Assembly (NCBI RefSeq): GCF_003704095.1
Contig: NW_020843834.1
Coordinates: forward strand, 806,001 to 870,000
Length of the DNA: 64,000 nucleotides
Source: Pocillopora damicornis
Taxonomy: Eukaryota
Reading direction: 5' to 3'
In this document: in pieces, positions 1,775 to 40,400 of the stretch
How the letters are laid out: each line of letters opens with the position of its first letter
Numbering within the stretch: position 1 is the stretch's first letter
Translations under genes and position numbers: made by a program
The notes under the pieces: model-generated
The model's database searches: none
Seen by the model: the letters and a program-made list of their open reading frames with translations, nothing else
Told to the model about the DNA's origin: nothing

Positions 1775-2748
1775 ATGATTATGGTCCAGATATGTTTCCT
1801 CGTGGTTCTCGTATTATTTAACCTTACAAGCTCCAGTTCTCAAGAAAATATCACTGATAGTGAACGATTCAGCAAAGCAAATGCAACCGCTTGCGAGGAA
1901 GGAAGGTACGTGTTGAACAAATGCGAAGAACGCTGTGAATGCCGGGATGGCAAGCTTATGAACTGTTATCGCGTTAGGAAGGAATTCACTAAAATGGACA
2001 TTAACTCAAGACGCCGCTTTCTTCGCACATACAAAATGGCTTCTAATCATGCTCTCTTCCGACGTAGCTTTGAAAAAGTCGTCGCTTATCATACAAATAC
2101 CTCCCACCAACTTCTTCACCAAACTCCATTCATCTTCCTTCCGTGGCATAGATGGTGGCTGGTCACATTTGAAAACCTTCTCCGTAGAATAAATTGCCGG
2201 GTGACTATTCCCTACTGGGACTGGAGCCAAGTTGCTTGTCACTGGTGGAGAGAGTCTGGTGACGAAGACATCTGGAACCCAGGGGATCATGGACTGGGTG
2301 GAGATGGGAACCCATTCGCTAACTTCTGCGTTGAAACTGGGCCTTTTAGTAAGGATAGATGGCAACTGCTGAGATCCGTAGGGGGAGGGTGTTTGAAAAG
2401 AGTTTTCTCCTACCAATGCTTGACCGGTAGCACGCATCACGTGAAGAGAACTTTAGCTCAGCCAGTAGAAGAGTTCTTCAAATTTGAGGAAACAATACGC
2501 TATGTTTATCATTATGAAATTCACGAGTTCATCGGTGGAACGATGCTCGAGTAGACGACATCTGCCAACGCCCCTGAAGTAGTTTTACATCATTCGTTTC
2601 TGGACAAGCTCTGGCTTCAATGGCAGAAGAAAGGCAAAGACTATAAATATGTTTACTTCTCGAAAAGTCGCCGCAAACTTCCTCAATCAGAGTATTACGC
2701 CTGGCAGTGGTTGGACTCCAAGTCAAAGTTCTGTACGAAGATTGGTGA
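1775..2748 (+). pseudogene. Secreted tyrosinase (type-3 copper protein), disrupted by an in-frame stop and a probable frameshift
   Basis: ATG 1775 begins a signal peptide (MIMVQICFLVVLVLFNLTSSSS). A Cys-rich segment precedes RVRKE, then CuA His residues (AYH..LLH..FLPWHR), IPYWDW, and CuB HYEIH..GGTM. TAG at 2552-2554 is followed in the same frame by TTSANAPEVVLHHSFLDKLWLQWQ, the rest of CuB. A plausible end, VKVLYEDW-TGA (2722-2748), is in the -1 frame. The coding region is a single exon, with an acceptor-like ttgtccttttcttggcag ending at 1768. Confidence 0.88.
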
Positions 2749-2793
2749 CACGGCACAGAGTGCTCCAGCATTCTCCTACATGCTCGAAAAGCA

Positions 2794-3110
2794 TAAGTAC
2801 TTATTGACCGAGAGGGTCGGACGGAAAAATATGCGGCTCGAGGTCGTAACCTACGGACCGAAATCCGTGCGTCATGACCGAGAGCCAAATATTTTCCCGT
2901 CTCGCCCGATCAATCTGAGTCAATAAGCATTTTATCATATGACCATTATGTGCTGAAAATTTCTTAACTTTATTTCAACCCAAAGCAGGGCTTTTCTTTT
3001 TTTTTTCTTCGAGTCAGACCGGCTCACGTCTACCCACCCGACCCCACACAAGTTACCATTCATTATGGTTTCCATGGCATTGCGCGTGCGGGCCATACGG
3101 TCATATGATA
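2794..3110. mobile_element. Non-autonomous palindromic repeat element (hairpin plus 12-bp inverted repeats)
   Basis: Imperfect hairpin cttattgac..gtcaataag across 2794-2933, then an exact inverted pair tatcatatgacc (2933-2944) and ggtcatatgata (3099-3110). Confidence 0.5.
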
Positions 3111-4318: not shown

Positions 4319-4461
4319 TCAACGTCCCCATGGGTACACTTTACCATGTACAACGTTACCAGGATGACGGTTTCCATGAATATTTGGCCAAACATTATCA
4401 TTGCCAAAATCCCCAGCAGGACTACCACCACCACACAAACCGCAGCTCTTAGGGCAGTTCT
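4319..4461 (-). CDS. Terminal exon: end of ShKT-3 and C-terminal tail
   Basis: Acceptor tttatccttcag. Reads (Q)NCPKSCGLCGGGSPAGDFGNDNVWPNIHGNRHPGNVVHGKVYPWGR-stop and completes the six-Cys ShKT pattern. Not in the ORF track in this frame. Confidence 0.88.
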
Positions 4462-7400: not shown

Positions 7401-10400
7401 TCCAAGTTCGTGCTCACGGAATCCATATCCAGCTCCAACGGCAATCCTTCTCACTTTGGCCTCCTGCGTTATACAGATATACATTTTACAAACGACAGTG
7501 ATGACTTTTACAACCAAGTTTGCTTATTACAAATAGAATTGCATATTGCTTTTGCTTTGCTGCGTTCTGTGACTGCTCTTGAAAACTTGCATGATTTTCC
7601 CAACCGATCACATGCAAAACTAAAGCCAATGGAGACCTGGTCACCCGTGCTTCCCCTTGCTTGACTTTTTATCGAATTGCACAAGCGCAATTTAACACAA
7701 CCAAGATAACAATTAGAACATGACATTTACTCACATCTAAAGGAGGAACTACCCGAGCGAGAGGCTTGTTTCCTTCGTATGTAGTTCCATGTGTAAGCAC
7801 AATCAATACATTTGGTTTATCTGGTCTGTCGCCACTATCTTCCCAGCCAAAAAGATCTTGCGCTGCTAGTTCCAGGGCTCTATCTGTTCTTGAACCTCCT
7901 CGACTGTGCGGCAGGCTGTTAGCTTTAGACTTCACCGCAGAAATTGTTTGGTTATCACTAAATCTGGAAATATGAGAGAACCCTTTCACTCGCAACACGT
8001 ATCTTTACTCCAGGAGTAAGATAGCCACAAACTATAGAGTAAATATCTTTGAGAAAGAGCCTCCACAGACCTGTGCCAGGTGTGTGCCTCCCAGCTGTAA
8101 GGGAGGATCGCCATATGCGTTCCTGCTCCAGAGATCTGAAGTCTATCAGCCAGTCGAATTAAATATTGCCGCACTAAATCGTAACCTGCAGGACTTATTC
8201 TATCCGAGGAGTCAATTATGACGGCGACATCGAGATGTTCTTTACAAGGTTTCGGCGGAGAAGTTGCAGGAGCTATGAGATTTATAAGCAAAAGATCGAG
8301 AACAAGATTATAAGTTGCAAGATTAGTGCATAGAGTGGTGAATTGTTGTCATTTGATTTAACGATATGAGTTTTGGTGTGATGACATAGAAAGTGATGTG
8401 ATGTTGTATAACGTGGCGTGTTGTTATGTTGGTTAGATGTGATCTGATTTGTTTGACGTAACGTGAATCGACGCGATGTGATACTTACACCTTATTCGAT
8501 AGTTTAACATATAATACGTGCGGATATTTTGCGACATGCGCAGTATTATTACGAGCCCCGTACGGGTTAGGAATAGTATGAGCAATGGACAGAATTTCCG
8601 CTCGTTTACATGGGTGTCATTAATGAACCTTTAAAAAAAAGTTTTGTGACACAATTTGTAGTTCATGTCTGGTATAATGGTAAAGTACTTACACTGGACA
8701 TCAAGATTAGCGCTAGCATTTACAGAAGGCTTCACTCCATTCTCTGCCGAACACCAGTATTTTCCAGATTGAGTTCTGTTTGTTCTAAAACTCAGTGTGT
8801 CTCCTTCAGCCACGGTTTTCCCATCTTTAGTCCACGTCATCTTTGGAGTTGGGTTCCCAGTGGCAGCGCACTGGAAGGTTAGCATGTCTCCTTCAGCAAC
8901 AATCTTGTCCGGTGGCTTGAGGATTATACTCGGGGGGTCTAAAAATGTGAAAATAGAAATCTAAAACAATACTTCTTTGCAATCTTTTCTAATCGTTATG
9001 ACCTTGTCCAGCGTTGTTTGGTTTTGAAGTTATACTTGATTCCTTGATTTTTGTTAATTAAAGAAGGGATAATGAAAAAAATAATCAAGGANNNNNNNNN
9101 NNNNNNNNNNNNNNNNNNNNNNNNNNNNNNNNNNNNNNNNNNNNNNNNNNNNNNNNNNNNNNNNNNNNNNNNNNNNNNNNNNNNNNNNNNNTAAGATTGT
9201 TACCGAGGGAAAATTGCTAACCTTCCAGTGTGCTGCCGCTGGAAACCCAACTCCAAAGATAACGTGGACTAAAAATGGAATAACTATGACTGAAGGAGAC
9301 ACACTGAGTTTTAGACCCAATAGAACTCAATCTGGAAAGTACTGGTGTTCTGCAGAGAATGGGGTGAAATCTGCTGTCAATGCCAGCGCCAATCTTGATG
9401 TCCAGTGTAAGTACAATAACGTTATAGCAATTGTTATTTGTGGTCCAATACTTGACCTCTTTTTACTAACTGCTTTGTTATTCACTTTTTCATGCTGTGT
9501 GTATTATATCTCAGTTCCACCAAGCTTTGATTCAAGACCAACAAATCAAACTGTTATTGAGGGAACGAATACAACTTTTCATTGCACTGCCACTGGGAAC
9601 CCAACACCAACTATAACGTGGATGAAAGATACAAAATCTGTGGCAGAAGGACAAACTCTCAGCTTTGAAACCAGCAGGAATGATTCTGGAAAATATTGGT
9701 GTTTGGCCACGAATGGACTTGGTGAATCTATCAATACAACTGTCAATCTTGATGTACAATGTAAGTTGGTAAAGAATCTAAGGAAAGTGTTTCCTCAAAG
9801 AAATATCATAACAGTACTAATGAGATTTGTAGAAAAAATTACGATTGGTGCAACCTAACTGTCTTTCCTGATGTGCAAAGAAAGTCATCTGCCTTTGTAA
9901 CAGATAGAACAGCAATATGCAGATCTCATCTTTATATAACTCAGGTGAAGAAGTTTATTCAAGTAAGATTTAGAGCTTTATGCAAGCCAGTGTGCTGTTC
10001 CTTGATTATTTTTTCATTAACCCTTCTTTAATTAACAAACATAAAGGAATCAAGTATAACTTCAAAACCAAACAACGCTGGACAAGGTCGTGACGATCAG
10101 AAAAGATTGCTAAGGAGTATTGTTTTAGATTTCTCTTTTCACATTTTTAGACCCCCCGAGTATCATTCTCAAGCCATCGGACAAGATTGTTGCAGAAGGA
10201 GACATGGTAACCTTCCAGTGCGCTGCCACTGGGAACCCAACTCCAAAGATGACGTGGACTAAAGATGGGAAAACCGTGGCTGAAGGAGACACACTGAGTT
10301 TTAGAACAAACAGAACTCAATCTGGAAAATACTGGTGTTCGGCAGAGAATGGATTGAAGCCTTCTGTAAATGCCAGCGCTAATCTTGATGTCCAGTGTAA

Positions 10401-13400
10401 GTATTTTAGCATTATACCAGGAAAATAGCTATGAGCTATTTCAATTTACAGACAAATATAAATTTTATGCGTGCTTTCTCTTCTGTTACAGTTCCACCAA
10501 GTTTTACTTCGAGGCCGAGCAACCAAACTGTTATTGAAGAGACGAATGTAAGTTTCCTTTGCACTGCCACCGGGAACCCAGCTCCAACTGTAACGTGGAT
10601 GAAAGATGGGAGTTCTGTGGCTGAAGGACATACCCTCAGCATTGAAACCAGTAGAAACGATTCTGGAAAATATTGGTGTTTGGCTGAGAATGGACTGGGT
10701 GAAGCTATCAATACGACGGTCTATCTTAATGTACAATGTAAGTTTGATATAGAAACTGGCAAAATAATATGCTCTGTGAAGAGCATTTACGACAATCCTA
10801 TCGAGACGCTTAAAAAAACAGATCGGTTTGTTCACTGCAGTTGTTGTATGCTAGCTTTGGAAAATGGAATGCAAAGCAAATCTGCAAACCTTCGTTGGAG
10901 ATCGTGGCCGTGGAAATTTCCCTCTAACGGATGACGATGCCTTTTCTAAGTCTGTATTTAAGGTTAATTTATGTTATTTATTTATTTTTGTGTTTTCTAT
11001 GTACTTGTCATTACTTCAGTAGTCTTTGTAGATGGACACTTTTGTTACCTTTTTTTTCCCTTCACCTTTAAGTTTCACCGAGTATTATCATCAAGCCAAC
11101 AAACAAGACTGTAGCTGAAGGAGACATGGTAGCCTTCCATTGTGCTGCCACTGGGAACCCAACTCCAAAGATGATATGGATTAACAATGGGAAGACTGTG
11201 GGTGAAGGAGACACACTGAGCTTTGAAACAAACAGAACTCAAACTGGAAAATATTGGTGTTTAGCAGAGAATGGACTAGCGTCCGCTGTCAATGCTAGCG
11301 CAAATCTTGATGTTCAGTGTAAGTACCATACATTTGACCCCGTAGAATAATCAGTAACCCGTTGATTGCAATCTGTGTTAATTCTTCCACATCCGCAATA
11401 GTCTTTGGTTCCTCCCTGACAAACTATCACTAGTCTTCTCCGTCTCAATAACAACTCAATGTTTATGTTTCATGTGCGTAACATAGCTGCTACAAAGAAA
11501 ATACTTCACGGATTTTGCATAAAGAATTTAAATCCTACAGATTTGAATACTGTGTATGATTTTTTTATTTTATTCCAGTTCCACCAAACTTTACTTCGAG
11601 ACCAAGCAACCAAACTGTTATCGAAGGAACAAAAATAATATTTAACTGTTCAGCAACTGGGAACCCTCATCCTGACATGTCATGGCTTAAGGATGGAAAG
11701 ACTGTGGCAGAAGGCGACACTTTGAGCCTTGAAACCAGCAGAAATGATTCTGGGATATATTGGTGTTTGGCTAAGAATGGAGTGGGTGAAGTTATCAATG
11801 CAACTGCCTATCTCGATGTACAGTGTAAGTTTGGAAACCAAACTCGTAAAATTGTTTTCTTTCAAGTGATATCATATCAATGCTATCGGTGAAAGTTGAC
11901 CACAATACTCTTACTTTTTCAAATTGTACACTTTTTTTAATATCTGAGTTATTAACCCCTTTCAGTCTCACCAAGTATTATCACCAAGCAAACAAACAAG
12001 ACTGCTATTGAAGGAGATATGGTAAGTTTCCGTTGTAAAGCCACCGGGAACCCAACTCCCATGATATCATGGATCAAAGATGGAAAGACTGTGGCCGAAG
12101 GAGATACTCTGAGCTTTAAAACCAACAAAACTCAATCTGGGGAATACTGGTGTTCAGCAGCGAATGGTATGAAGGCTACTGTGAATTCCATTGCCAATCT
12201 TGATGTCCAGTGTAAGTACAATACATCTGTACCAGTTGATCCGACTACAAAGACTTAGTAAGTTACTGAAAGAAGCTCAACTCAACTGCGTTCAAAGTAA
12301 TGCGGGGGTACGTTGTTTCTGCTTCCTTCGTTGTGTGATTCGTCTCGAAAATTCCCGCCACCCCCTCCCCCTCCCTCAAAATAATCAGTTGCGAAATAAA
12401 GGCTCGCCTTACTTGCTTTTCTAATAGGCTCCTTGCCCTCCTTTGTTCTGATCGGTCATTCTGGTTTGAAAGTTTTTTGTTTTTGTTTTACAACATGCAG
12501 TAGAAATCCGCTCTGTGAAATGCAATTAGATCTCATTTGTTTCAGTTCCACCAAGCTTTACTTCAAGACCAACTAACCAAACTGTTATCGAAGGAACGAA
12601 CACAACCTTTCACTGTGCTGCCACTGGAAACCCAACTCCTAAGATGTCGTGGCTGAAAGATGGGGAAACTGTGGCTAAAGGGGACACATTGAGTCTTCAA
12701 ACCAACAGAAGTGATTCTGGAAAATATTGGTGTTTTGCGGACAATGGACTGGGTGATGCTATCGAAACGACTGCTCATCTTGACGTACAGTGTAAGTATG
12801 GCGAAGAAAGACTGTCAAAAGTTGGTTTTTTTCGATAAACTGTCCAAAGGATAAAAAGCGTGAAGTGCGGTCGTTTGTGTCTGTTTACAAATTTGACATC
12901 TCCATATTAAAGGGAATTCTTCAAGCTGGTTGAAGATCAGAGAAAATCATACTAAAAATTACTCCATGTTCATTCATAACATTGATATAATTTTAATATT
13001 ATGTTTCCGTAACTAGAGCGAAAATAAGGGATAGGGGTTACAAGACTTAAGACCTCTATCCTACATTTATCCTCCCTCCCAATGACTAGTCCCTTTGTAG
13101 TTCTTGGTATCTCTGTGCTGTGCTCTGTTTCCAATGTATTGATATATCACGAGCGCTTGTTTTCTGCCACAGTCCCACCAGCTCTGACTGTTACTCCTAC
13201 AAACTTAACTATGGCCGAGGGTCACAATGCAACTCTCCGCTGCTCAGCTGCGGGGAATCCCACTCCAACGATAACATGGATGAAGGATGGTCAGACTGTA
13301 GCTACAGGAAGATCACTTACTTTAGAAGTTAAGAAGGAAGATTCTGGAATATACTGGTGTATTGCGGATAACGGTTTGAGAGTCACGGCCAATGCTAGTG

Positions 13401-16400
13401 CTTTTCTCAACGTTCAGTGTGAGTAAATGCTTTAGTATATATCTCACATAGCCGAAGGTGTGCTTTATGAGCCACTTTTTTTGTTCTTACCACATTTTGA
13501 CGTCATCTGTGATCAATTATTGGACAGACCCGCGGCCAATTAGGATCTATTTGTCTATAGTACAGTACTGCTCGTATGTATAGAGTCAGAGGCGCGTCGT
13601 ACATGGGAATTACTTCACTTATTTTGTGTAATTTACTTGCATTTTACACTTACATGCGTGCATTTTTGATAAACAAGTAGCTTCTGATGTGATGTGAAGT
13701 GTGCGTGCTTCGCGCGCGCAGTGCGTGGGAATACCACGCGTGTAACGCATGTGTAATGTTGCGGTATACCCGAGCAGTATTGTACATTCAGTCTAAAGAC
13801 CGCAGTGTTATCTGCGTTTAAATTTTTGCTCAGTGTATTCCGTTTTACCATTTTAGTCTCATCTGGTTTCACTACGCTACCATCTGACCAGACTGTCATG
13901 GAAGGCGAAGAAGTGATATTCCATTGCGCTGCTAAAGGAAACCCAATGCCTAGAATAACTTGGACAAAGGATGGAAATATACTGGCTTCAGGAAACACTT
14001 TTAAGTTTAGAGCCCGTAAGAATGATTCCGGAGAATACTTTTGCTTGGCTGAGAATGGAGTAGAACTAGCCATCAATGCAAGCGCCCATCTTGATGTACA
14101 GTGTAAGTTTTACCTTATAGTTTTCACCGATGGTCGTCTTCAACCTTAGCAATTTTTGTTATCTTTTTTTCCCAGGTGTCTTCTGTCTGACCGAAAAACA
14201 AAACAATCTTTGGTCTCTTTTAAACCGAAGGTCAATTCAGCGGGGTAGAACAAAATTGTGTTCCGGCATGATTTCAAATCGCCTAAGTGATTACCGATTA
14301 AGTTATTCATCTTGAAATACAGTTCACGATACAGCAAGGCTCAGACCCTCTCCTTCCCAAGGGTAAACACGAATTTGTCCACTATCAATACAATTTCAGG
14401 CAAACGAATTCTCAGAACTGAAATTATAAGAAACGTTTGATTGGCACAATGCGGAAAATTTATGTGAAGATGTAAAGAGTGAAGCGTTTGATAGTGTATG
14501 CTAAGTTTTCTTTGTTTGTATTGTGTCACAGATGCACCAAGCTTCGTGGTCAAACCAACGAACAAAACCATTACTGAAGGTAGCTCGGTGGTATTCACTT
14601 GCGATGCCACTGGAAACCCAATTCCAGAGATTACATGGTTTAAGGATGGGGAGACTGTTGCTAAAGGAAAGAAACTGATGTTTGTTACCAATAGGAATCA
14701 ATCTGGAGAGTACTGGTGTTTAGCTGCCAATGGGTTAAATGTGACTGTCAATGCTAGTGCTTCTCTTGATGTTCAGTGTAAGTATAGCTTAGTGTAAACT
14801 TAAACTCATACCAGGGTCGGTACAACAAAATAAAAAAAATCGCAGTGGAGGAAAACGAACAATAATTCAGTCTGTGTCAATCAGTACTTACGACTATGGG
14901 GAAAAGGAAAGGGGACGGGGGAATTCATAAGGTATTCATCTCGATCGGTGAGTTTTAGTGATCCTTGTAACCGTAATGACAAAGCAAAAACTTGACAGCA
15001 AAGCGCTCCTGATTAAGTGCGCATCGGCAAACTGTTAGAGGGTTCCCTGAAGTTGATTAGCATCGTGGGCGAAAAAATTAGAAAGAATCCATCAAGACGT
15101 TAGCCACGTTAGCTGGAATTTCCATTATGTTGATAATGTTGTTCCGGATAACCGAACTCCGCCGAACTTACTTTACGTAATTTGCAGTTCCACCAAGTTT
15201 TACAGCAACACCAAGCGATCTGACTGTTCGAGAAGATAGTGAAGCAAGATTCCATTGTTCTGCCTCTGGTAATCCAACCCCTGAGATAACATGGATGAAA
15301 GATGGGAAGACTGTGGCTCAAGGAGGTGTGCTGAGGTTTTCTGCCAAACGAAATCAGTCTGGGGAATATCAATGTTCAGCAGATAATGGACTAGGTGTGA
15401 ATATCACCGCTAGTGCCTCTCTTGATGTACAATGTAAGTTGACGTAACACGTTTGTCAATTTTGGNNNNNNNNNNNNNNNNNNNNNNNNNNNNNNNNNNN
15501 NNNNNNNNNNNNNNNNNNNNNNNNNNNNNNNNNNNNNNNNNNNNNNNNNNNNNNNNNNNNNNNNNAAATCTAAAACAAGTCGTACATTTGGTAACTAAGT
15601 CGCTATATGTTTACCTTCTACAAATCAGCACAAAATAATCAATTCTTTATTTCGACCTTAGCCAACGCTGTTTGGTTTTGACTTTACACTTGATTCCTTG
15701 ATGTTTAGTAATTAGAGAAGGGATAATGAACAAAAAATAAGCAAGGGAACACCACACTGCCTTGTATAAAGCTTGTGTTGCCTCGGTATAATTTTGATAT
15801 TTTAAGATACCAATCTTATTTAAATAAACGTCTTCACCGGAGTTACATAAATATGTGAAACTTCATATTGCTTTTCTATCTGTTACTAAAATAGATGAGA
15901 TTTTAGCATATCCGGAAAGACAGTTAGGTTGAACCAAGATATTTATTTGTGCTGTTATGATGTTTCTTTTAGGAAACACTTTTCCGTAGTTTCTTTACCA
16001 AACTTACATTGTACATCAAGATTGACAGTTGTATTGATAGATTCACCAAGTCGATTCGTGGCCAAACACCAATATTTTCCAGAATCATTCCTGCTGGTTT
16101 CAAAGCTGAGAGTGTGTCCTTCTGCCACAGATTTTCCATCTTTCATCCACGTTATAGTTGGAGTTGGGTTCCCAGTGGCAGTGCAATGGAAAGTTGCATT
16201 CGTTCCCTCAATAACAGTTTGATTTGTTGGTCTTGAATCAAAGCTCGGTGGAACTGAAATATAATACACACAGCATGAAAAAGTAAATAACAAAGCAGTT
16301 AGCAAAAAGAGGTCAAGTATTGGACCACAAGTGAAAACTGGTATAATGTTAATTGTACTTACATTGGACGTCAAGATTAGCGCTGGCATTGACAACAGCT

Positions 16401-19400
16401 TTTACTCCGTTCTCTGCCGAACACCAGTATTCCCCAGATTGAGTTCTGTTGGTTTCAAAACTCAGTGTGTCTCCTTCACCCACAGTCTTCCCATCTTTAG
16501 TCCATGTTATCTTTGGAGTTGGGTTACCAGTGGCAACACAATGGAAGGTTACAAAATTACCCTCGGTAATAATTTTGTCCGTTGGCTTAATGATGATACT
16601 TGATGGGTCTAAAAAAAAGTGATTTAGAGAAATATAAAGCAAATTGAACATTTTGGAGCAAAGTCAAGATTTGTGTATTTTCAAAAATTGAGCGTAAATG
16701 AACTTTTCATTTCCACTATTTTCTAACCTTTCCGACCTAAGCTATCCTTGTTTGCTTTGGGCTTAATACTCGACTCCTTGATGTTTGTTGCTTTAAAACG
16801 CGATAATGAAAAAAAATAACACTAAGGGAACCGAAAACTGCCAAGTATAGAGCTCGTGAAACTTTAGTATCAGATAGGACACCATTCTCACTTAAATAAA
16901 GTTCTACACCGGGGTTACATAAAGATGTGATCTGCATGAGGGTTTCTTTCTTTACTAAATTTGTTGAGATTTTGGCAAATCAGGAAAAACAGTTTGGTTG
17001 GTACAAAAGTAAATTATTTTCTACATATTCTATTATCATTGTTATGATCTTTCTTTTAAGAAACAGTTATCCTTTTGTTTCTCTACCAAACTTACATTGC
17101 ACATCAAGATAAACTGTCGTATTGATAGCGTCACCCAGCCCATTCTTAGCCAAACACCAATACTTTCCAGAATCATTCCTGCTGGTTTCAAAGGCGAGAG
17201 TGTCTTCATCAGACACGGAAGTGCCATTCTTCATCCATTTTATGGTTGGAGTTGGGTTCCCAGTGGCAGTGCAAAGGAAAGTTACATTCGTTCCTTCGAT
17301 AACAGTTTGGTTGCTTGGTCTCGAAGTAAAACTTGGTTGATCTGGAAAAAGAGAAAACAAACAAACCAGTAAATTATAAGCCAGCAAGTACAAATATGCT
17401 TAATAATAGACTACCATCAAAGATTTTCTGTTCTTCTCCTGGTAGGGCGCTATCGTACTTACACAAAACATCAAGATTGGCACTAGCATTATCGGTAAAC
17501 TTCAATCCATTGTCTGCTAAACACAAGTATTTTCCAGATTGAGTTCTGTTAGCTTCAAAGCTCAGTGTATCTCCTTCCTCTACAGTCTTGCCATCTTTAA
17601 TCCACGTTATTGTTGGAGTTGGGTTCCCAGTGGCAGTACAGTGGAAGGCTACCTCATTTCCTTCTGCGACAGTCTTGTTCGTTGGGTTGACGACAATACT
17701 TGGGGAAACTAAGAAGAAAGGACGATTAAGAAGAAAAGTAATCGTGTTCATCTTCAACAACACAACGAAAAAGTAATCAGGTGTCGCTTTGTTCGTCCTA
17801 GGCCAGTCCTGATCTGTCTTCGTTTGTTTTGAAATGTGTGCTAGAAGCAGATCTAGAAATTCGTAATAAGGGAAGGACGACCGGACCTAAATACACTTAT
17901 TTTCAGTTTTTCAGCCTCGATAAGCTAAGTACTATTCAAAAACAAGTAAATTTAAATACTTCATACTAAGTAGTAGTATGTAAAACTGTCTTTGCAACAA
18001 TTTTAGGGTTAGACGTTCGACAAGTAAAAATACCCGAAGGTCTAATAAGGGGGGGGGGAAGTGTTTTCGGACACCAACCCTCCCCGAACTTCCCCCTGGA
18101 TCTACCACTGGTTTCGACACGATTGTCTTAAAACTTTTAACACAGCGCATTACTTCGTCAGTTTCTTTATCAGACTTACATTGTACATCAAGATAGGCAG
18201 TGGTGTTGATAGTTTCACCCACTCCATTCTTAGCCAAACACCAATAATTTCCAGAATTGTTTCTGTTGGTTTCAAGGCTGAGAGAGTTTCCCTCGGCCAA
18301 AGCATTCCCATCTTTCATCCACGAAATCTTTGGAGTTGGGTTCCCAGAGGCATTACAATGGAATGCAGTTTTTGTTCCTTCCATAACAGTCTGGTTGGCT
18401 GGTTTCCACTTAAAGTTTGGCGGAACTAATAAATGGTGAATCATTCATGAAGTTTAGAACAGCAGGAGATGGGAAAACATTAGCTCGGTAAGTGAAAAAA
18501 ACATAAAAAGAGAGAAAATAACTCAAGAAGTCACAAGAATAAAAAATATTGAAATACAATTGACGACTTCTTTTTTCTATTTTCCTGGTACAATGCTAAA
18601 GTACTTACACTGGACATCAAGATTGGCGCTGGTATTTACAGGAGACTTCAATCTGTTATCTGCCAAACACCAGTATTTTCCAGATTGAGTTCTGTTGGGT
18701 TTGAAGCTAAGTGTGTCTCCTTCAGCCACAGTCTTCCCATCTTTCATCCACGTTATATTAGGAGCTGGGTTGCCAGTGGCAGTACACTGGAAGGTTGCCA
18801 TATCTCCCTCAATAACAGTCTTATCCGTTGGTTGGCTGATAATACTCGGGGAAACTTAGTGATGAATAAAAGGATATAAGTTTTCAATTACGCAGCCGAG
18901 TTACGACTTGTTCATCTTCAACAATAAATTAAAAACTAATCAAGTTTCCATTTACAATCTATTCCAATCCCCTCTCTGAGTTAGCCATTCCTATTTGCTT
19001 TCGGTCTTATTCCTAACACATTAGTGTTTCTCGATAGAGACAGGATGTTAAAGTGTGGGAATCGGAAATTGTCGCATTAAAAAAAGCTCAGGTTACCTTT
19101 AATTTTAACATCAAGAAAGGATATCACTATCGGCTACAGGAAGATCTTCAAAGGAGGTTCGCAGATATGATATTCATATCGCTTCTCTCGCCTTTTTCAT
19201 GTTTCTAGTGTTTTGGAACATACACAAATTCAGCCAAGTTACACGGCACGAATTGAATTTTTTTTTTCCACTTCGTTGGCATTGTCATAATATTTTTTGT
19301 GAAAATACTTTTCTTGTTTCTTTTTAAACTTACATTGTACATCAAGATAGACAGTTGTATTGATAGCTTCACCCAGTCCATTCTTAGCCAAACACCAATA

Positions 19401-31400: not shown

Positions 31401-34400
31401 GATTACTGGAAGTCTGGGGCATTTATATATCGATATTGCTTACAATTAAGTTACAAACACCTTTCAGCCATACTTACATTGTACATTAAGGTAGGCACTA
31501 CTATTGGTTGTTTTATCCAATCCATTTGTTGCAGAACACCAGTATTTTCCAGAATGATTTCTTTTAGCTATAAAGCTCCAAGAATCACCCTGAGCCACAG
31601 TCTTCCCATTTTCAATCCATGTTATAGTTGGAGGTGGGTTGCCAGTGGCAGTACAGTGGAAAGTCACTTCCTTATTTTCCACAATTGACTGATCCTGTGG
31701 TTTGATTTTGAGACTAGGAGGAACTGTAGAGTAAATGATACAAATTATTTTGCAGAAGTTGTTTCTTATTAGTGTACATTAGATACATAACATACATATT
31801 TAAACATTCAATTTCAAAACTATAACTTATTACAATGTTATCTTATACACTCACATGACGTCTGCCTGGTTATAAATTTTATCCATGATAGATAGGAAAG
31901 ATGGCTGAACTTTGCATGACAATTGTTTTTCGTGTTGAAAATTTAATAGTTAATAAAATATATTTAGAAAATATTAAGTTTTTGATCAAAACTAACATTG
32001 AACGTCAAGATTAGCACTGGCATTCACAGTTGAGTTAAGTCCATTCTCTGCTGAACACCAGTATTCTCCAGACTGATTCCTGTTGGTCTCAAGACTCAGA
32101 ATGTTTCCATCAGCAATAGTCTTCCCATCTCTAATCCATGTTATCCTTGGGGTTGGGTTGCCAGTGGCATTGCAATAGAATGTTACAGTTTCAGATTCCA
32201 TGACTGTGTGATCTTCTGGGGTTGTGATTAAACTTGGTGTAACTGAAAAAAAAAGGTACACATATATCTTGATGTATTTATCCAGTTATTACTTAAATAT
32301 GGTAATTGCATGCAGGGCAAATTGGGGCATCAAATAGATAATAAAATAAGGGGTTGAACCTAAAGTTCATCCAGCTGACCATTGCATTATGCTGGGCAAC
32401 TATTTAATGATAAACATATTAAGTAGAACCCCACTAACTTGAATTCCATTGAGTCAAACCCCCTGGTAACTCAAACAAGATCGAATTTCCCTTGACCCTA
32501 TTTTCTTGGTCATTTAAAACCAGCTAACTCGAATTCCTGCCACGTGAAGCTCCAACCATTTTCGTTTCCGTTAGGAGTTTGGGTTATCAGGGTTCTACTG
32601 TACATTCAGTCAGCCCCCTCAAAGACTAACTCCTTTTTGTTCAATGCCAAGTGTCTGTGTTACTGAGGATCTTTGATCAGAATAGTTTAGATATTAAATG
32701 TGAGCAAAGAATTTGAATGGAAGAAACTCTGCCATTTTATTCAGTGTTCTACAGAGAAAGAGCTGACTGCGTACTGATGTGTACTTACACTGCACATCCA
32801 AGGAAGCACTTGTGTTAACTGTTATATCTAAATTATTGTCTGCTAAACACCAGTATTTTCCAGAGTGGGTTCTGTTGGCTGTGAGACTCAGCGTTTCTCC
32901 CTCGGCCAAACGGTTTCCGTCTTTTAGCCATGTTATCGTTGGGGTTGGGTTTCCAGTGGCTGTACAGTGGAAAGTGACTTGTTCACTTTCCATGGCAGTC
33001 TTATCAGATGGTTTGGTAGAGAACCTTGGAGGAACTAGGAATAAAATGCGAGAAATTATGAAGGGATCTACAACTATACTTCAATGTAGAAATTTTTTTC
33101 AAAATTGTCAACAGATACATACATTGAACATCAAGATTAGCAGTGGAATTCACTGTTGAGTTAAGTCCATTTTCTGCTGAACACAGGTATTTTCCAGACT
33201 GATTCCTGCTGGTTTCAAAACTGAGTGTGTCTCCCTGACCTACAATCTCTCCATCTTTCATCCATGTTATCTTTGGGATTGGATTTCCTGTGGCGTTGCA
33301 GAAGAATATTGCTTCGGCTCCCTCCATAACTGTTTGGTCAGTTGGTGTTGTGATCAAACTTGGTGCAACTAAAACAAAAAATACAAGTTCTTCATTCAGA
33401 CTCCCTGCTTTTGGAATGACAGAAGTATTGATACTTTTGAGTATGCATAACGCTTTACGCAAGATCCCCAATCTCATATGTGGGTCTTTGATGACGATCA
33501 ACGTTCAAAGCTAGACCATTTTTTTTCTCATGGCCAATGCAAGCCATCATGCAAGCTTCATATTTAACTAGCAGTGGAAAGTGGAAGGCCTCGAGTGGAT
33601 AGACTGACGATGCCTTTACTAGATATAGGCCTCCTTAATCAGCCCGTGTCTGAAACGGAATAGGGTGAGGCTGTAATAAGAAAGTAGCTCCTTCCACTTT
33701 CCGACTCAGATAAGAACACGGTAGAGAGGAGTAATTTTTAAGTTTTTTTGAATCACATGGATCCTTTACTCTACAGATACATGTATATGCAAGTTGAATT
33801 TATTTACATTGAACGTCAAGATTTGCACTGGCACTTGCAGTAGAATTCAATCCATTTTCTGCGATGCACAAGTATTTTCCAGAGTGATTCTTGTTAGTTC
33901 CGAAGCTCAGACTTTCTCCTTCAGCAACAACCTCCCCATCTTTTTTCCATGTTATTTGTGGGGTTGGGTTTCCTGTGGCATTGCAGTGGAATGTTGCTTT
34001 GGCTCCTTCAATAACTCTCTGGTCAAGTGGTGTTGTGATTAGACTTGGTGGAACTGAAATAAATTAATACCTTTATGTCATTAATGTTCAATTTTGATAC
34101 ACTTTTTTCACGGAGAGCCATCTGTTAGTTCGGGAAATGTGTGAAGTGTACTGTTACCAGAAGATAGGAACAACTGGCTATCTCTTACCGCAGGCTCATG
34201 TGTTTAGGTTTTAGGTAAGCTGAATTTCAAAGTTGCTGTTCCCCTTCATTTCGTTGTTTTTATACTCACACTGTACATCCAGATAAGCACTGGCATTAAC
34301 ACTGTCCTCTAAGCCGTTTTGTGCCAAACACCAGTATCTTCCACTTTGACTCCTAAGTGCCTTGAAGCTGAGTTTATTTCCTGTGTCTACTTCCTCCCCG

Positions 34401-37400
34401 TCTTTGATCCACGTTATTTTTGGAGTTGGGTTCCCAATGGCACTACATTGGAGATTAACGTCTTGGTTTTCCATGACTACTGTGTCCGATGGTTTGGTGA
34501 TTAAACTAGTTGTGTCTGAAATAGAAATAAAGATATCATGACCTCGTGAATCACAGAGTAATTTATCGAAATGGCTCAGGAATTAAATCAAATACTTACA
34601 TTGAACGTTGAGATGTGCGCTTGCACTAACGGTAGAATTCAAGCCATTCTCTGCTGAACAAACATATTCGCCAGATTGAGTTCTGTTTGTTTCGAAGCTC
34701 AGTGTGTCTCCGTGAGTCAAAGTCTTCCCATCTTTCTTCCATGTTATCGTTGGGGTTGGATTTCCATCAGCCACACAGAGGAATGTCGCTAGGGTACCCT
34801 CAAGAGCGGTGTGGTTTGTCGGAGTGGTGGTCAAACTTGGTCTATCTGAACCGAAAAGGCAAAATTAAAGGTGAGTTCTATGTAGCAAATATGTATGTGG
34901 CCTTCTTTACCATGTGCCTTAAACAATTCTTAATCGAAACTCGAACGTCATTATGGATTTCATTAGTTTTCCCTTACTTTACTTTAAGATTGAACCAGGG
35001 AACACGGACCCTGCTCTGAACCAATCAAATGCAGAGCTTAAACAACCTTGTCTTTCTTGCAATTCAGGCAATTTTTTTGTTTTTAGAAGAAGGCTCTTGG
35101 GCCACCCGTGAAATTTTTCCTTGACTGTTCTGATTATCCGTTACCATTCATTTTGTTTTACAATACGGTATGTGAACGCGCTTTGTCGTCATCTTAGTAA
35201 AGAGCTGTACAGCTTTTATTTNNNNNNNNNNNNNNNNNNNNNNNNNNNNNNNNNNNNNNNNNNNNNNNNNNNNNNNNNNNNNNNNNNNNNNNNNNNNNNN
35301 NNNNNNNNNNNNNNNNNNNNNAGTTAGCCGTGGGCAAAAAGCTTTCAAATCAAACCAGCTACTTACATTGAACATCTAGATGTGCGCTGGCGCTCGCAGT
35401 AGAATTTAAACCATTCTCTGCCAAACAAAAATATTCGCCAGATTGAGTTCTGTTTGTTTCAAAGTTCAGTGTGTCTCCTTGGGACACAGTCTTCCCATCT
35501 TTCTTCCATGTTATTTGTGGGATTGGATTTCCATCAGCCACACAGCGGAATGTCGCTGAGGTACCCTCCAGGACGGTCTGGTTTGTCGGATTAGTGATCA
35601 AACTTGGTTTATCTGGACCGAAAAAGGTATAATTAAAGGTAAGTACTATGTAGCCAACGTGTAATTGGCCTTCTTTACCATGAGCCTAAAACAATGCTTG
35701 ATTGAAACTCAAAGGTTATCCTGGATTGTACTGGTTTTACATTACTTTGCTTTGCGATTGGACCAGGAAACACGCAGCACCTTCTGAACCAATCAGATGC
35801 AAGCGTCCATGTCTTTCTCGGGCAGTTTTTCTGTTCTTACCAAAAGTCTCAGGAGCTTTATTTTCGTGATTTTCTTCATAGTTTAACAATTCACTTACAC
35901 AAAACATCCAGATCAGCACTGGCGTTGACAACATCTAATCCATTCTCCACTGAGCACCAGTATTTCCCAGTTTGATTCCTATTAGTTTCAAAGCTCAGCG
36001 TATCTCCGGATCCAACCTTCATCCCATCTACTGTCCATGTTATCTCTGGAGCTGGGTTGCCGGTGGCGGTGCAGTAAAATGTTGCCGAGGCGCCCTCCAT
36101 GACAGTCTGGTTGATTGGAGTGGTTTTTAAACTTGGCGGAACTACAAGAAAAGCAAATTGTCAATTTTCGTAGGTCTGCCTGGTGTACTGTGGTCTGCAT
36201 GGTGTACTGTGGAAATCATTGTCACAGTTAAATCAATCCCCGGATCGCTAGCAAGCCGCTAAGTCGAGGTGATCTTTTAGTCTCTATTTGGGATTTTTTT
36301 CCTATCCTTTCTCCTTTTTTTGAGTGAGCGGGGATCGGCTTGACCAATTTTTTCTTAGTGTGTATGGTTCTTTTTATCTCACTTTGGACTATTCAAGAAA
36401 ACTTGTTGAGCTCTAAGCCAAAAAGATGAAACCAATTTCGAGTACGTCACTTGTACTTTCGCCGCGACTGAAGCCAATTACGTGTTTTAATTTTGGGTTT
36501 TAATTTCTTCTTGTGATATTTTGCAGACATTTTATTGGTCGTTACAACTACTTTGGATTTGGATTTTTGGCGGTCGCTCGAATATTGGACGACGATCGTG
36601 GTTACAAGACTTAAATCTTACCTGTTGGTATGAGGCCTGAATGATGTGTGTAGAGACTATAGAACCCGTTAATTAACTCTCTTATTCTGACTTTCATTAA
36701 AAATATTAAGAGTCATTTCTTACATTGAACATCAAGCATAGCACTAGCATTAACAGTGGAATTTAATCCGTTCTCTGCTAGACACCAGTACTTTCCAGAA
36801 TCATTTCTGTGGGTTTCAATATTTAATGTTTGTTCTTGAGACACAGTTTTCCCATCTTTCATCCATGTTATCTTAGGGGCTGGATTTCCAGCGGCTGCAC
36901 AGTGGAATGTTGCCGTGTTACCCTCTAAGACAGTTCGATCCGAAGGAAGGGTAGTCAAGCTTGGTTTGTCTGAAATAGATTAAGTTGAAATAAATTTCTC
37001 AGCAATTTTCCATTGCCTACTGTTACAGTTTCTGTATAATTAAGCGACCTGGTAGTGTATTGTTATCCTTTTGGGTGAGTTAATGAATTAGTCATAAGCA
37101 GGTTTGATGAGAAAAATATTTTGCATGCCTATTGTGACGATTAAGCGGACTTGGAGTACTGCTAATCGCTCCTGATAACATTCTAGCCCCTTCCCCCAAG
37201 AAGGGGGAAGGGGCTAGAATGGGCTATTACCTCGTCGAATTTCCTTTGCAGTTTGTTGTTAGTAATAATTGATATACCCTGAGATGAGTAAAACGTAAAC
37301 TCCAGCTGTTTCTACCTATGGGGCCGTGGATAGGAAACTAAACTCAACTACGGTATAGTGATACTTCACGAACAGAGTGCTTTAATGGTAAATTTCGCGG

Positions 37401-40400
37401 TCAACACGCACGTATCTCAAACTGAGATACGACGTTTATAACAGTCTAGTCTTTCACTGTACGCATGGTACTCACAAAGAACATCCAGGACAGCACTGGC
37501 ATTAGCGTTAAAATTCAACCCATTTTCTGCTGTGCAAACGTATTCTCCAGACTGATTCCTGCTGGTTTCGAGGCTCAATACTTCTCCAGACTCCACATCT
37601 TCGCCATCTTTTGTCCATGTTATCGTTGGAGCCGGGTTCCCGGTGGCAGTGCAATGAAATGTTACTGTTTTGCCCTCCATGATGGTCTGGTTTACTGGAA
37701 CAGTTGTTAAACTTGGTGGAACTGCGAACGAAGCGGACAGGAATTGTTTTGTTGGTTTTTAGAGCTCTTTGTTTATGAACTCGCTGTCGGTTTCTTTGCA
37801 AATTTTAATAGTTCACAGGTTGAACAACCCCTAGAACCCTGAAAAGAACACTTAACATAGAGGTTGCATAACTTGAAGGTGTAGACGAGGTTGTAAACAT
37901 CATTTTTCATCCTACATCTACAGCGTACTGCTTTAACCCCATACTTAGAAAAACGACAAAAAGTCATCGCTTACATTGAACATCAAGCATAGCACTAGCA
38001 TTAACAGTGGAATTTAATCCGTTNNNNNNNNNNNNNNNNNNNNNNNNNNNNNNNNNNNNNNNNNNNNNNNNNNNNNNNNNNNNNNNNNNNNNNNNNNNNN
38101 NNNNNNNNNNNNNNNNNNNNNNNAAAGTCTTTCTCAGAACAAACGATCAAACGCAGAAGTATGGATGACATCCGTTCAAATTGATTTCCTTTCGTGATAA
38201 AATAGCTGTAGAAATTTGTTACTGATTTGTAAAACTGACATTGCTTACCAAGAATAATTGGCACTGTGGTTATAGAGTCTTCGCCCATAAGGTTGCTTGC
38301 CTTGCAAGTGTAGTTGACCCCATCTTGATCCTTATCGACTTCTTTTATAACCAGTGTTCCGTCCATATCCAACTTGTAGCGACTGTTCTCTTCGTAAGTA
38401 ATAAGCTCGCCATCTTTAAACCAGCGATATGATGGTTGCGGCGCTCCTGTGCTAGGCTTACAAGGTAACCTAGCCTCTTTCTCATTGAGCAGATGAAAAG
38501 GACCAAACTGCACGTTTTCAAAAGATGGCTTCCAAGCTGTCGCGAGAATGATATGAAGTGATTTTGTGAGTTTGTTATGAGAGTTATACCGAGCAATATG
38601 GCTAACCATTTTCATCAGAAACCTCTCGATTCTAAGTCGATGGCCACTATGAGTTCGAGATTCTTCAATGGCGAAACAGTGGTTGTATGCCGACATTAGT
38701 TATTTTGGCGGATAAAAGGCATTAGCCGAGTCTTGGTGGTGGTGTCAAATTCAAGGTATCGACCTGTCAACAGTTTTACAGTTTTTCGATTACGAAAGGG
38801 TGTAATTACGTCTCATAATGGAGACTGTATTGCTCGTTCAGTATGCAGGAAAGCTATATTTTGCATTAACTTGCATTCAGATCTCTATTGGTAATGTTGT
38901 AATGTAGGAAGGCAACATTACTAAGCTTATTCTAGTTTCTCTACTGAATAATCCTCACAAATGGGATAGGAGTCCTTGGCTGGTAAGTCACCAGCAAGTT
39001 GGTCAGATTGCCGGAAGGTTGCTTGTAATTCAAGAGTTAAGTTTTTGGAGGAGACTGCTACCCGATAACCAGCCAGGGATAAAACCTGGACATCTCAATC
39101 CGCAGTATTACACGCTAACCACCAGGCCCCGGTTGTTCGAATGGTAGATAATAACCGGGTAAATATATATCCACTGAATAGTGTAATACGCTTTGTTAAC
39201 ACTTATCCACTTTATGGCGGTCTATCTGTTGGATAGATTTATCCGCCCTTTTTACAACTGGCCTCAGTCATCTAAAAGTCTTCCGAGTGCACTCTTAATT
39301 TTTGCTTGCGATTAGGTACCTGAAACGTAGACCCAAGTTGAAGATATGATCGTGCCATGAGCATTGGTGGCCTCGCATTGATAGACGCCTGTATCGTCAA
39401 GATTCACATCTGTTAGATGTAACTTGTTGTCAGCTAAGACAAGACGCCTAAATTTTCCAAAAGGAAAACATATAATCAGTAGATTCGGGAGCTAATTACA
39501 AAGTTTAAAACGCATGAACGCGAATACTTTTTGTGTTTTTCGAGATGCTCTGGGCGTTTCCATCATTCAAAGGGCTGTAGGCCCTCAAGGCAAATTGTGT
39601 TAAATTTTCCTCAAAATATTTAGAAATGAATCGATATATAACATTTTGACCTATTTAAGATGTTTCATTTACAGGTAGAATAATACATAACTCATTTTGA
39701 GGGAGAGTAACACATAAAACTCCTTTTTTCCTTATTCGTCATTGAACAATCAGTAGCGAAATATTTTGTATTTGATGAGCAGAGTGGTTCAGTGATCTCA
39801 TATCTTCGACATTCATCCAAAATAATTCGGGATACGTGAATGTCACTGCAAATGGCACTTGATTCTGAAACTTTTTTGCGCTAGTCAAGCTAAATAGCTC
39901 TTCCCAGTTTTCTCATTTTGCTCGTCTCTTTAACCGCGCGCTAACTCACCTCATTTCACGTCAAGAGTTTACATTCAAAGGCAATAACTCTTGTTTGGGT
40001 TTATTTTTAGCTTTTGTGGTTTCATTTTACACGAAGTATAGGATGCAACGCTATCAAGTTTACCTCCCTGTGTTTTAAGAAATATTATTATGCAAACTTA
40101 CCCTGAAGGCTGAAGTACTTCTCCATTTTTATACCATGTCGTTATTGCAGCAGGGTTTGCTGTTACTTGACATTCCAACGTGCCGTTTTTTTCAATGACG
40201 ATGGTGATGTCATTTGGTGGAGGATTCGCTGCCCATTTTGGTGGAACTGCGAAGTGGAATAGGATCGCAAGGGTGTTAGAGCATAATGTTATTGTTTTTT
40301 GTTTGTTTGTTTGTTTGGTTTTGTTCTTCATTCCTTTTTTTTCCTGTGTGTTTCCTGGTTTGTTTGTGTTCTTAATAATCAGAATTACCTTCAATCTCAA

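What the first reader, a model, noticed from the sequence alone, without database searches (positions are those of the whole stretch)
8693..38023. Array of at least 46 freely interchangeable one-domain Ig exons: candidate diversity-generating cassette in an anthozoan-like genome
Seen: 44 complete and 2 gap-truncated exons, 43 of exactly 246 nt, all phase 1-1, none with a stop or frameshift that I could find. Every exon ends in T and begins TT/TC/AC/AT, so any exon joined to any other rebuilds an in-frame Phe or Tyr junction codon (xVx-F/Y-xx). The array is flanked by unique constant exons on both sides, the same constant-variable-constant layout as Dscam clusters. Inference: skipping, mutually exclusive use or unequal crossing-over would all yield intact proteins differing in length or surface, a possible route to immune, allorecognition or symbiont-binding diversity. 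Caveat: introns are long enough (84 nt or more) for constitutive splicing, I saw no docking/selector elements, and the dimeric periodicity fits a constitutive stalk equally well.
Basis: partly seen in the sequence, partly recalled or inferred. Interest (0 to 1): 0.85.

Follow-up and report, generated by a model that had tools for sequence, protein, structure and literature searches.

The report
Giant L1-type adhesion gene's Ig stalk
The 46 near-identical-sized exons are real, but they are the middle of one huge coral cell-adhesion gene of the L1/neurofascin family. In every RNA junction I could test they are spliced one after another, so this looks like a very long fixed stalk, not a diversity generator.

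Summary
The exon observation holds: 44 complete exons (43 of 246 nt, one of 243 nt) and 2 gap-truncated ones. All are phase 1-1, AG/GT-bounded, end in T and start TT/TC/AC/AT. Each encodes one I-set Ig domain.

Three corrections.
1. The 12 exons at 9192-15433 lie on the + strand. They sit on a 6.3-kb contig between two 100-N joins that was flipped in place. Gap-free Tara Pacific scaffolds, and RNA that runs from a + strand exon into a - strand exon, show this.
2. The array continues outside the window, giving at least 59 exons.
3. The gene is an L1-family IgCAM: Ig head, array, Ig, FN3, transmembrane helix, Bravo_FIGEY tail. The VWA-TSP1-ShK exons beside the array belong to another unit.

RNA contigs from three studies join only adjacent exons at all 10 junctions examined, and some run through four exons. 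This rules out Dscam-type one-of-many use as the dominant mode there. No docking or selector complementarity was found. Exons are old (dS about 1.2), individually conserved against a relative (dN/dS 0.22), and identical in order across the Tara scaffolds covering M20-P11.

Exon number does change between genera, by amplification of 2-, 4- and 5-exon units. Best reading: a constitutive, glycosylated Ig rod roughly 240 nm long. Rare exon skipping is not excluded.

The parts
43505..43858 (-). Open frame holding a unique N-terminal Ig domain of the gene's head. ORF bounds are given; splice sites were not fixed.
   Evidence: Pfam Ig_3 4e-10 and I-set 6e-9.
42420..42845 (-). Open frame of a second head exon. 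It looks Ig-like by eye only.
   Evidence: ORF. No Pfam hit, so the assignment is weak.
41284..41528 (-). Head Ig exon, cut by gap 41066-41283.
   Evidence: Pfam Ig_3 9e-9.
40101..40418 (-). Open frame holding the first half of a further head Ig domain.
   Evidence: Pfam Ig_3 and I-set, partial match.
38249..38536 (-). Last unique exon before the array. It is the Ig5-equivalent of the contactin/neurofascin head and ends in phase 1.
   Evidence: Best PDB stretches fall on Ig5 of contactin-2 (411-476) and neurofascin (436-498). The relative has an 87% aa orthologue just upstream of its array.
37975..38023 (-). Array exon M00: the 3' 49 nt only. The rest is in gap 38024-38123.
   Evidence: Sequence read. 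It ends ...LDVQ + T followed by GTAAGC.
16008..37721 (-). Array exons M01-M32: 31 of 246 nt and one of 243 nt. Gap 35222-35321 lies in the M04/M05 intron.
   Evidence: Exon table. RNA joins 18609-exon>18180-exon>17463>17096>16363>16008. Tara scaffolds show the same order.
9192..9406 (+). Array exon P00. Its 5' end is lost in gap 9092-9191. It lies on the flipped contig.
   Evidence: In gap-free Tara scaffolds it follows M32 after a ~460-nt intron on the same strand.
9515..15433 (+). Array exons P01-P11 (11 x 246 nt), on a 6,274-nt contig mis-oriented in the scaffold.
   Evidence: RNA joins 12791>13173, 13418>13857, 14102>14532 and 14777>15188 with GT..AG on the + strand, then leaves 15433 for a - strand exon outside the window.
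8693..8938 (-). Exon Z01, a 97% copy of P02 together with 153 nt of its upstream intron (95.5%). It sits 345 nt upstream of a VWA exon and is probably not part of the main transcript.
   Evidence: Linkage to VWA is confirmed by Tara scaffold L014. No place for Z01 exists in the gap-free M32>P00...P11>S01 order.
4322..8348 (-). VWA (7278-8348), TSP1 (6684-6863) and two Cys-rich ShK-like frames (6410-6751, 4322-4651).
   Evidence: Pfam VWA and TSP_1; the ShK-like call is by eye only. In another relative the VWA is preceded by TSP1 repeats, not Ig.

Best explanation
The array is the constitutively spliced middle of one very large gene for an L1-family (L1CAM/neurofascin/neuroglian-type) transmembrane adhesion molecule, read on the - strand.

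Gene layout:
- Unique Ig head exons, window about 43.9k down to 38.25k.
- At least 59 one-domain I-set exons: M00-M32, P00-P11, a truncated copy, and S01-S13.
- Two to three unique Ig exons, four to five FN3 domains, a transmembrane helix, and a Bravo_FIGEY cytoplasmic tail at C469:764.7-773.9k, which is 32-41 kb below the window start.

Every array exon is bounded by phase-1 introns with strong splice sites and is joined to its neighbour. The product would therefore carry a rod of about 60 tightly linked Ig domains with about 3 N-glycosylation sequons each. At about 4 nm per domain that is roughly 240 nm, set between the adhesive head and the membrane-proximal Ig-FN3 stalk. The rod length is an inference.

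Over evolutionary time the array grows and shrinks by tandem duplication of 2-, 4- and 5-exon units.

Shown: exon structure, adjacent splicing at 10 junctions, gene family of the tail, exon order across the gaps, unit amplification.
Inferred: a single transcript from head to tail, the rod geometry, and the spacer function.
For: - **Splicing.** RNA contigs of three studies join only neighbouring exons, exactly at the predicted sites. Contigs of 1014-1016 nt run through four exons.
- **Continuation outside the window.** RNA continues from P11 into 29 letters that match C469:784798-784826 (-) exactly. That is the first exon of 13 more array exons.
- **Tail.** Downstream of those exons lie Ig, fn3 x4, a hydrophobic helix and Bravo_FIGEY (40.4 bits against a cutoff of 23.8).
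- **Relative.** A relative's gap-free 964-kb contig has the Ig5 exon, then at least 58 array exons, then Ig6, FN3, TM and FIGEY, all on one strand over about 100 kb.
- **Order across the gaps.** Tara Pacific scaffolds at 97-100% exon identity give M20..M32>P00..P11>S01-like on one strand. The M32>P00 and P11>S01-like joins lie in N-free sequence. Exon order and number are the same wherever the scaffolds overlap.
- **Locus.** Array-type exons occur almost only at this locus in the genome.
- **Selection.** Paralogue dS is 1.2 with dN/dS 0.26. Orthologue identity exceeds best-paralogue identity, with dN/dS 0.22.
- **Splice sites.** 34 of 44 donors are GTAAGT.
- **No selector system.** No docking or selector signal was found.
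Against: - Only 10 of about 58 junctions were examined. They were seen in assembled RNA contigs, which drop rare variants, so low-level skipping cannot be excluded.
- No read or contig shows head, array and tail in one molecule.
- The zone after P11 holds near-identical (P11'-S01') repeats whose number is unresolved here and may vary.
- One Tara copy of such an exon carries a stop.
- The tail motif reads FVGEF, not FIGQY, so ankyrin coupling may differ.
- The function of the rod is untested.
Confidence: 0.8

Rival explanations
1. Titin-like differential splicing. The array is mostly included, but blocks of symmetrical exons are skipped in some cells or stages. This would give receptors of different length.
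For: All exons are phase 1-1 with a rebuilt Phe/Tyr codon, so any skip stays in frame. Contigs cannot show rare isoforms (note). One Tara copy of a repeat exon has a stop, which would be tolerable only if that exon is skipped or is an assembly error.
Against: No non-adjacent joint was seen in three RNA studies over 10 junctions. The two 'goes back' joints are edge artefacts: the letters between them are the end of the next exon, 18609-18854. Donors are consensus. Every exon is under purifying selection.
Confidence: 0.12
2. Dscam-type cassette. One or a few of the exons are chosen per mRNA by competing RNA pairing. This would yield many receptor isoforms for immune or allorecognition use.
For: The layout is unique exons, then many similar exons, then unique exons.
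Against: RNA contigs carry four consecutive array exons, and all neighbours are joined. No 11-mer of the flanking introns has a complement (1 mismatch or fewer) in more than 2-4 of 53 introns, the same as shuffles. No shared intron motif exists. Introns are not conserved in the relative. Each exon is a whole domain, with position-specific orthologues.
Confidence: 0.01
3. Germline length polymorphism. Unequal crossing-over keeps exon number variable among colonies, and this variation is used for self/non-self or symbiont recognition.
For: Different multi-exon units are amplified in different genera, with copies at 97-100% identity. The near-identical (P11'-S01') repeats after P11 are unresolved here and appear twice in the longest Tara scaffold.
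Against: From M20 to P11 every Tara scaffold covering part of the span, and the reference, share the same exons in the same order, with intron lengths within a few nt apart from one ~60-nt indel. A DNA run shows no unit-sized joint over 12500-18450. Short-read scaffolds cannot count near-identical repeats.
Confidence: 0.07
4. The gene model implied by the window is right. The array ends in Z01-VWA-TSP1-ShK, giving a secreted hemicentin-like protein, either as the main product or as an alternative 3' end.
For: Z01 lies 345 nt upstream of the VWA exon in this assembly and in an independent Tara scaffold. The closest full-length proteins by array-domain similarity are hemicentins (37-38% identity).
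Against: RNA from P11 goes to the S01-type exon. Gap-free scaffolds put only a ~490-nt intron between P11 and S01-like, with no VWA unit there. The relative's array region holds no VWA, TSP1 or tyrosinase in the 63 kb sampled. In another relative the VWA is preceded by TSP1 repeats. Z01 is a recent copy of P02 (dS 0.08).
Confidence: 0.07

Closest known systems
L1 family IgCAMs (L1CAM, neurofascin, NrCAM, CHL1; Drosophila neuroglian; C. elegans SAX-7)
   Same: The order is Ig head, then FN3 repeats, a single transmembrane helix, and a cytoplasmic Bravo_FIGEY domain. The exon before the array aligns best to Ig5 of contactin and neurofascin. L1s are reported in Cnidaria (PMC10084454).
   Different: L1s have six Ig domains. 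Here about 60 extra one-exon Ig domains sit between the Ig5-equivalent exon and the last Ig domains. The ankyrin motif reads FVGEF, with no Tyr. I found no paper describing such a giant L1.
Hemicentin (fibulin-6)
   Same: It has a long run of 40-50 tandem I-set Ig domains. Hemicentin-like proteins are the best full-length hits to an array domain: 51 or 42 matched stretches at 37-38% identity.
   Different: Hemicentin is secreted, with an N-terminal VWA and C-terminal TSP1, G2F, EGF and fibulin modules. This gene ends in FN3, TM and a FIGEY tail. The nearby VWA-TSP1-ShK unit is not joined to the array by the RNA seen.
Titin / obscurin tandem-Ig regions
   Same: Many single-domain Ig exons of uniform size, symmetrical phase, super-repeat units amplified in tandem, and a rod or spacer function. 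In titin these exons are differentially skipped (established knowledge).
   Different: Those proteins are intracellular and unglycosylated. Here the rod is extracellular, with about 3 N-glycosylation sequons per domain, and no skipping was seen.
Arthropod Dscam1 alternative exon clusters
   Same: An IgSF receptor gene with arrays of similar exons between constant exons. Array domains also hit Dscam Ig domains in the PDB.
   Different: Dscam clusters encode half or one Ig domain, used one per mRNA, with docking and selector RNA pairing. Here neighbours are spliced together and no such elements were found.

Membership tests
L1 family IgCAM | Conserved cytoplasmic domain (Pfam Bravo_FIGEY, ankyrin-binding FIGQY region) | tested here: met
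   PF13882, 40.4 bits against a cutoff of 23.8, E 6.8e-10, on C469:764710-765000 (-). The motif variant FVGEF/FVGEI is conserved in relatives. The Tyr itself is absent.
L1 family IgCAM | Single transmembrane helix between the FN3 repeats and the tail | tested here: met
   A 22-residue hydrophobic run followed by basic residues in the frame at C469:765826-766011 (-). Judged by inspection only. An orthologous piece is present in the relative.
L1 family IgCAM | Three to five FN3 domains after the Ig domains | tested here: met
   Pfam fn3 on four exon frames at C469:768.4-771.9k. Same order in the relative.
L1 family IgCAM | Six N-terminal Ig domains, the first four forming a horseshoe | tested here: inconclusive
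   Four to five unique Ig exon frames lie upstream of the array, and the last aligns to Ig5 of contactin/neurofascin. One frame has no Pfam hit and one is cut by a gap. The total Ig number is about 65, not 6. The horseshoe was not modelled.
L1 family IgCAM | Head, array and tail are one transcript | tested here: inconclusive
   One strand and one contig in the relative, and no terminal or initial exons inside the array. RNA links were shown only for P07-P11>S01 and for the 18609-exon down to 16008.
Dscam-type mutually exclusive exon cluster | Only one exon of the cluster in each mRNA | tested here: not met
   RNA contigs hold four consecutive array exons. All ten joins are neighbour to neighbour.
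Dscam-type mutually exclusive exon cluster | Docking site complementary to a selector upstream of each variable exon | tested here: not met
   The best complementary 11-mers hit 2-4 of 53 introns, and shuffles give 3-7. The most widespread exact 11-mer is in 3 of 53 introns. Part of the first intron lies in a gap.
Hemicentin | N-terminal VWA, then Ig array, then TSP1, G2F, EGF and fibulin C-terminal module; secreted | tested here: not met
   The array is preceded by Ig head exons and followed by FN3, TM and FIGEY. No G2F or EGF was seen. The hemicentin-like hits are only 37-38% identical per domain.
Titin-like differentially spliced tandem Ig | Blocks of symmetrical Ig exons skipped in some isoforms | tested here: inconclusive
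   No skipping joint was seen in contigs of three RNA studies, but contigs drop rare forms and only 10 junctions were seen.

The most novel reading that the evidence does not exclude
The L1-type receptor is made in many lengths. Uniform phase 1-1 exons with a rebuilt Phe/Tyr codon would let cells skip blocks of the ~60 Ig exons. The near-identical repeat units after P11 would also vary in number among colonies. Colonies or cells would then display different receptors, usable for self/non-self or symbiont recognition.
Probability: 0.1. Interest if true: 0.8.

Novelty: new variant of a known kind. Interest (0 to 1): 0.4.

Why it matters
L1-family adhesion molecules keep six Ig domains from cnidarians to vertebrates. 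A member with about 65 Ig domains, giving an ectodomain roughly 0.25 micrometre long if extended, would be an extreme departure. It raises the question of which coral-specific cell contact or surface layer needs such a long, glycosylated tether.

The locus is also a clean example of exon-unit amplification in progress: different 2-, 4- and 5-exon units have been amplified in different genera.

It also shows how a flipped small contig, and a foreign unit placed inside a repeat array, can suggest a wrong gene model. For the scan, the case shows that in-frame interchangeability of Ig exons is not evidence of combinatorial use.

Tried and rejected
- **Tandem Repeats Finder** sees nothing, because the period exceeds 500 nt and copies are only ~67% alike.
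- **My first exon regex** missed the array through a spacing that was too narrow. It was fixed.
- **The all-protein HMMER search** with one exon gave only hemicentin-like and other IgSF giants at 41% identity or less. No full-length model of this gene is in that library.
- **Word-based protein searches** return single-exon ORFs without names, because of the length window. They were useful only as handles to contigs.
- **A PDB sequence search with the tail** found nothing.
- **Mis-orientation by overlap.** The - strand contigs on either side of the + block do not overlap each other (85% over 93 nt only).
- **Gap-riddled zone.** The tiny contigs at C469:785061-789562 do not match the Tara array sequence.
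- **The two 'goes back' joints** were rejected as artefacts of the stretch edge.
- **Depth** was not used to rank exons, as the tool warns.
- **Spliced exons were never joined for any search tool.** Every search was exon by exon, by reference, and the joined-model step was left out.
- Read laying was given 5,951 letters.
- **Gaps were not filled.** Scripts and look-ups on other assemblies incidentally printed the start of the exon cut by gap 9092-9191 as it stands there. Those letters are not used or reported.
- **Organism.** No tool confirmed this.


Full report
**1. Observation**

The window is 64 kb with 38.9% GC and six N runs.
- There are 44 complete exons: 43 of 246 nt and one of 243 nt (35899-36141).
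- All end in T. They begin TT (28), AC (6), AT (6) or TC (4).
- Donors are GTAAGT in 34 of 44, and acceptor tracts are 80% pyrimidine.
- Two more exons are cut by gaps: 37975-38023 and 9192-9406.
- Each exon is one Ig_3/I-set domain.

So the counts and the junction rule are right.

**2. Gaps and strands, tested first**

Exon 8693-8938 and the 32 exons at 16008-37721 are on the - strand. The 12 exons at 9192-15433 are on the + strand, and they fill exactly the 6,274-nt contig between the 100-N runs 9092-9191 and 15466-15565. At both gaps like faces like: two donors face gap 15466-15565, and two acceptor sides face gap 9092-9191. That is what a flipped contig gives.

RNA contigs confirm it. They splice the + block exons with GT..AG on the + strand and the neighbouring exons with CT..AC. 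After + exon 15188-15433 they continue into 29 letters that are absent from the window. Those letters are present, exactly, at C469:784798-784826 on the - strand. One RNA cannot change strand, so the contig is mis-oriented.

Independent, largely gap-free Tara Pacific metagenome scaffolds settle the order. Their exons are 97-100% identical to the window's, and three of them hold one 100-N run elsewhere. The order is M20...M32 > P00 > P01...P11 > an S01-type exon (intron ~490 nt) > further repeats, all on one strand. The + block is therefore flipped in place.

About 30 kb of the scaffold lies between that block and exon S01. It holds Z01, VWA-TSP1-ShK, a tyrosinase gene and many tiny contigs. 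In those genomes none of it lies between P11 and S01.

Gap 35222-35321 sits in an intron between two complete exons that are 86% alike, so it may hide copies. I did not fill any gap.

**3. Extent**

The window is C469:806001-870000. Below it, on the - strand, lie 13 more array exons (S01-S13) at C469:774579-784826. They are 243-249 nt long and follow the same junction rule. A further exon end, cut by a gap, lies 99 nt upstream of S01.

Array-type exons occur in this 234-Mb genome almost only at C469:774-844k. At least 59 exons are visible, and more are hidden in gaps.

**4. What gene it is**

Downstream of S13 on the same strand come, in order:
- two to three unique Ig exons;
- four frames with Pfam fn3;
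- a hydrophobic helix followed by basic residues;
- a Bravo_FIGEY domain (PF13882, 40.4 bits, cutoff 23.8).

Upstream of the array are unique Ig exons. The last of them, 38249-38536, aligns best to Ig5 of contactin-2 and neurofascin.

A relative's 964,515-nt contig shows the same gene on one strand over about 100 kb. It was sampled in six loci, none of which contains any N, but two stretches of 9-10 kb were not fetched. The Ig5 exon (87% aa) is followed by at least 58 array exons, and then by orthologues of Ig6, FN3, TM and the FIGEY tail.

This is an L1-family IgCAM with about 60 extra Ig domains. L1s are known in Cnidaria (PMC10084454). I found no description of a giant one. A third genome has the same kind of array, with 19 exons in 20 kb.

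**5. The neighbouring unit**

Z01 (8693-8938) is a 97% copy of P02, together with 153 nt of upstream intron at 95.5%. Its dS against P02 is 0.08.

It lies 345 nt upstream of a VWA exon, which is followed by TSP1 and two Cys-rich ShK-like frames. The Z01-VWA linkage is real, since a Tara scaffold begins inside Z01. In another relative, however, the VWA is preceded by TSP1 repeats, and the gap-free array order has no place for Z01.

I read this as a separate gene that recently acquired an array-exon copy. An alternative 3' end is not excluded.

**6. How the exons are used**

I laid three RNA runs from three studies and one DNA-like run on 12500-18450. Every joint is between neighbours, at the predicted bases:
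- 12791>13173, 13418>13857 and 14102>14532;
- 14777>15188, seen as loose ends;
- 16363>16253, 17096>16608, 17463>17341 and 18180>17708.

Two 'goes back' joints also appear at 18425. Their intervening letters are the end of the next exon, 18609-18854, which lay just outside the stretch. They are therefore also neighbour joins.

Contigs of 1014-1016 nt cross four exons. This excludes one-of-many use as the dominant mode. The limit of the test is that contigs drop rare forms and only 10 junctions were seen.

**7. Other tests**

- *Docking or selector pairing.* No 11-mer of the flanking introns has a complement (1 mismatch or fewer) in more than 2-4 of 53 introns, which is no better than shuffles. 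No exact 11-mer is shared by more than 3 introns.
- *Intron conservation.* Introns are not conserved with the relative: one short HSP in 53.
- *Age and selection.* Exons are old and distinct. Mean pairwise nt identity is about 0.65-0.70, median dS is 1.2 and dN/dS is 0.26.
- *Orthology.* At least 17 exons have collinear reciprocal-best orthologues in the relative. Their identity (0.65-0.83 aa) exceeds that of the best paralogue, with dN/dS 0.22.
- *Pattern of variation.* Variable columns alternate with core columns along the strands, with no hypervariable patch.
- *Glycosylation.* There are 2.96 N-glycosylation sequons per exon.

**8. Change in exon number**

- The relative carries a 5-exon unit (M20-M24-like) about 4.5 times, and a 4-exon unit three times, at 97-100% identity. 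One of its array introns holds a retrotransposon.
- This genome amplified an A/B exon pair about eight times (M25-M32, P00-P07; 80-97% identity).
- Among the Tara samples, the span M20-P11 is invariant. The (P11'-S01') repeats after P11 are unresolved.

**9. Verdict**

The exons are real. The diversity-cassette reading is not supported. The best reading is the constitutive rod of a giant L1-type adhesion receptor.

Noticed in passing
window 1745-2923 (+): A tyrosinase-domain gene (Pfam Tyrosinase, E 1e-17), convergent with the VWA-TSP1-ShK unit. The same linkage appears in Tara scaffold L014.
   Followed up: partly
window 8669-9091 (-) versus 9999-10420 (+): Z01 and 153 nt of its upstream intron are a recent copy (95.5-97%) of exon P02 and its intron, now 345 nt upstream of a VWA exon. 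In another relative TSP1 repeats stand there instead. This may be a fresh case of exon capture.
   Followed up: partly
G000:C469:801505-802839 (+), about 3.2-4.5 kb below the window start: A small contig between 100-N joins holds VWA-like pieces in unnatural order, plus degenerate copies of exons M31 (with a TAG stop) and M32/P01. It is a pseudo-copy or a mis-assembly.
   Followed up: partly
window 13296-13693 (intron P08/P09): Summed contig depth jumps to over 1000 in the DNA-like run and to several hundred in the RNA runs, with many loose ends. This looks like a high-copy repeat inside the intron.
   Followed up: no
G000:C469:784926-784960 (-): A third gap-truncated array exon end lies 99 nt upstream of S01. 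It is similar to, but not identical with, the end of P11, so at least one more exon pair is hidden in the gap-riddled zone 784961-789662.
   Followed up: yes
L027:7990-8235 (Tara scaffold): One sample's copy of the P11'-type repeat exon carries an in-frame stop, while the same exon is open in four other samples. It is either a pseudo-exon or a short-read assembly error.
   Followed up: no
L010:10751-16054 and L013:16507-16716 (-) (relative's contig): A Pao/BEL-type retrotransposon sits in an array intron of the relative. A second Bravo_FIGEY exon lies tail-to-tail just beyond the gene, suggesting a neighbouring L1-type paralogue.
   Followed up: no
window 18426-18608 (intron M27/M28): This intron is 183 nt here but 123-126 nt in the Tara scaffolds. 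It is the only sizeable intron-length difference seen between M20 and P11.
   Followed up: no
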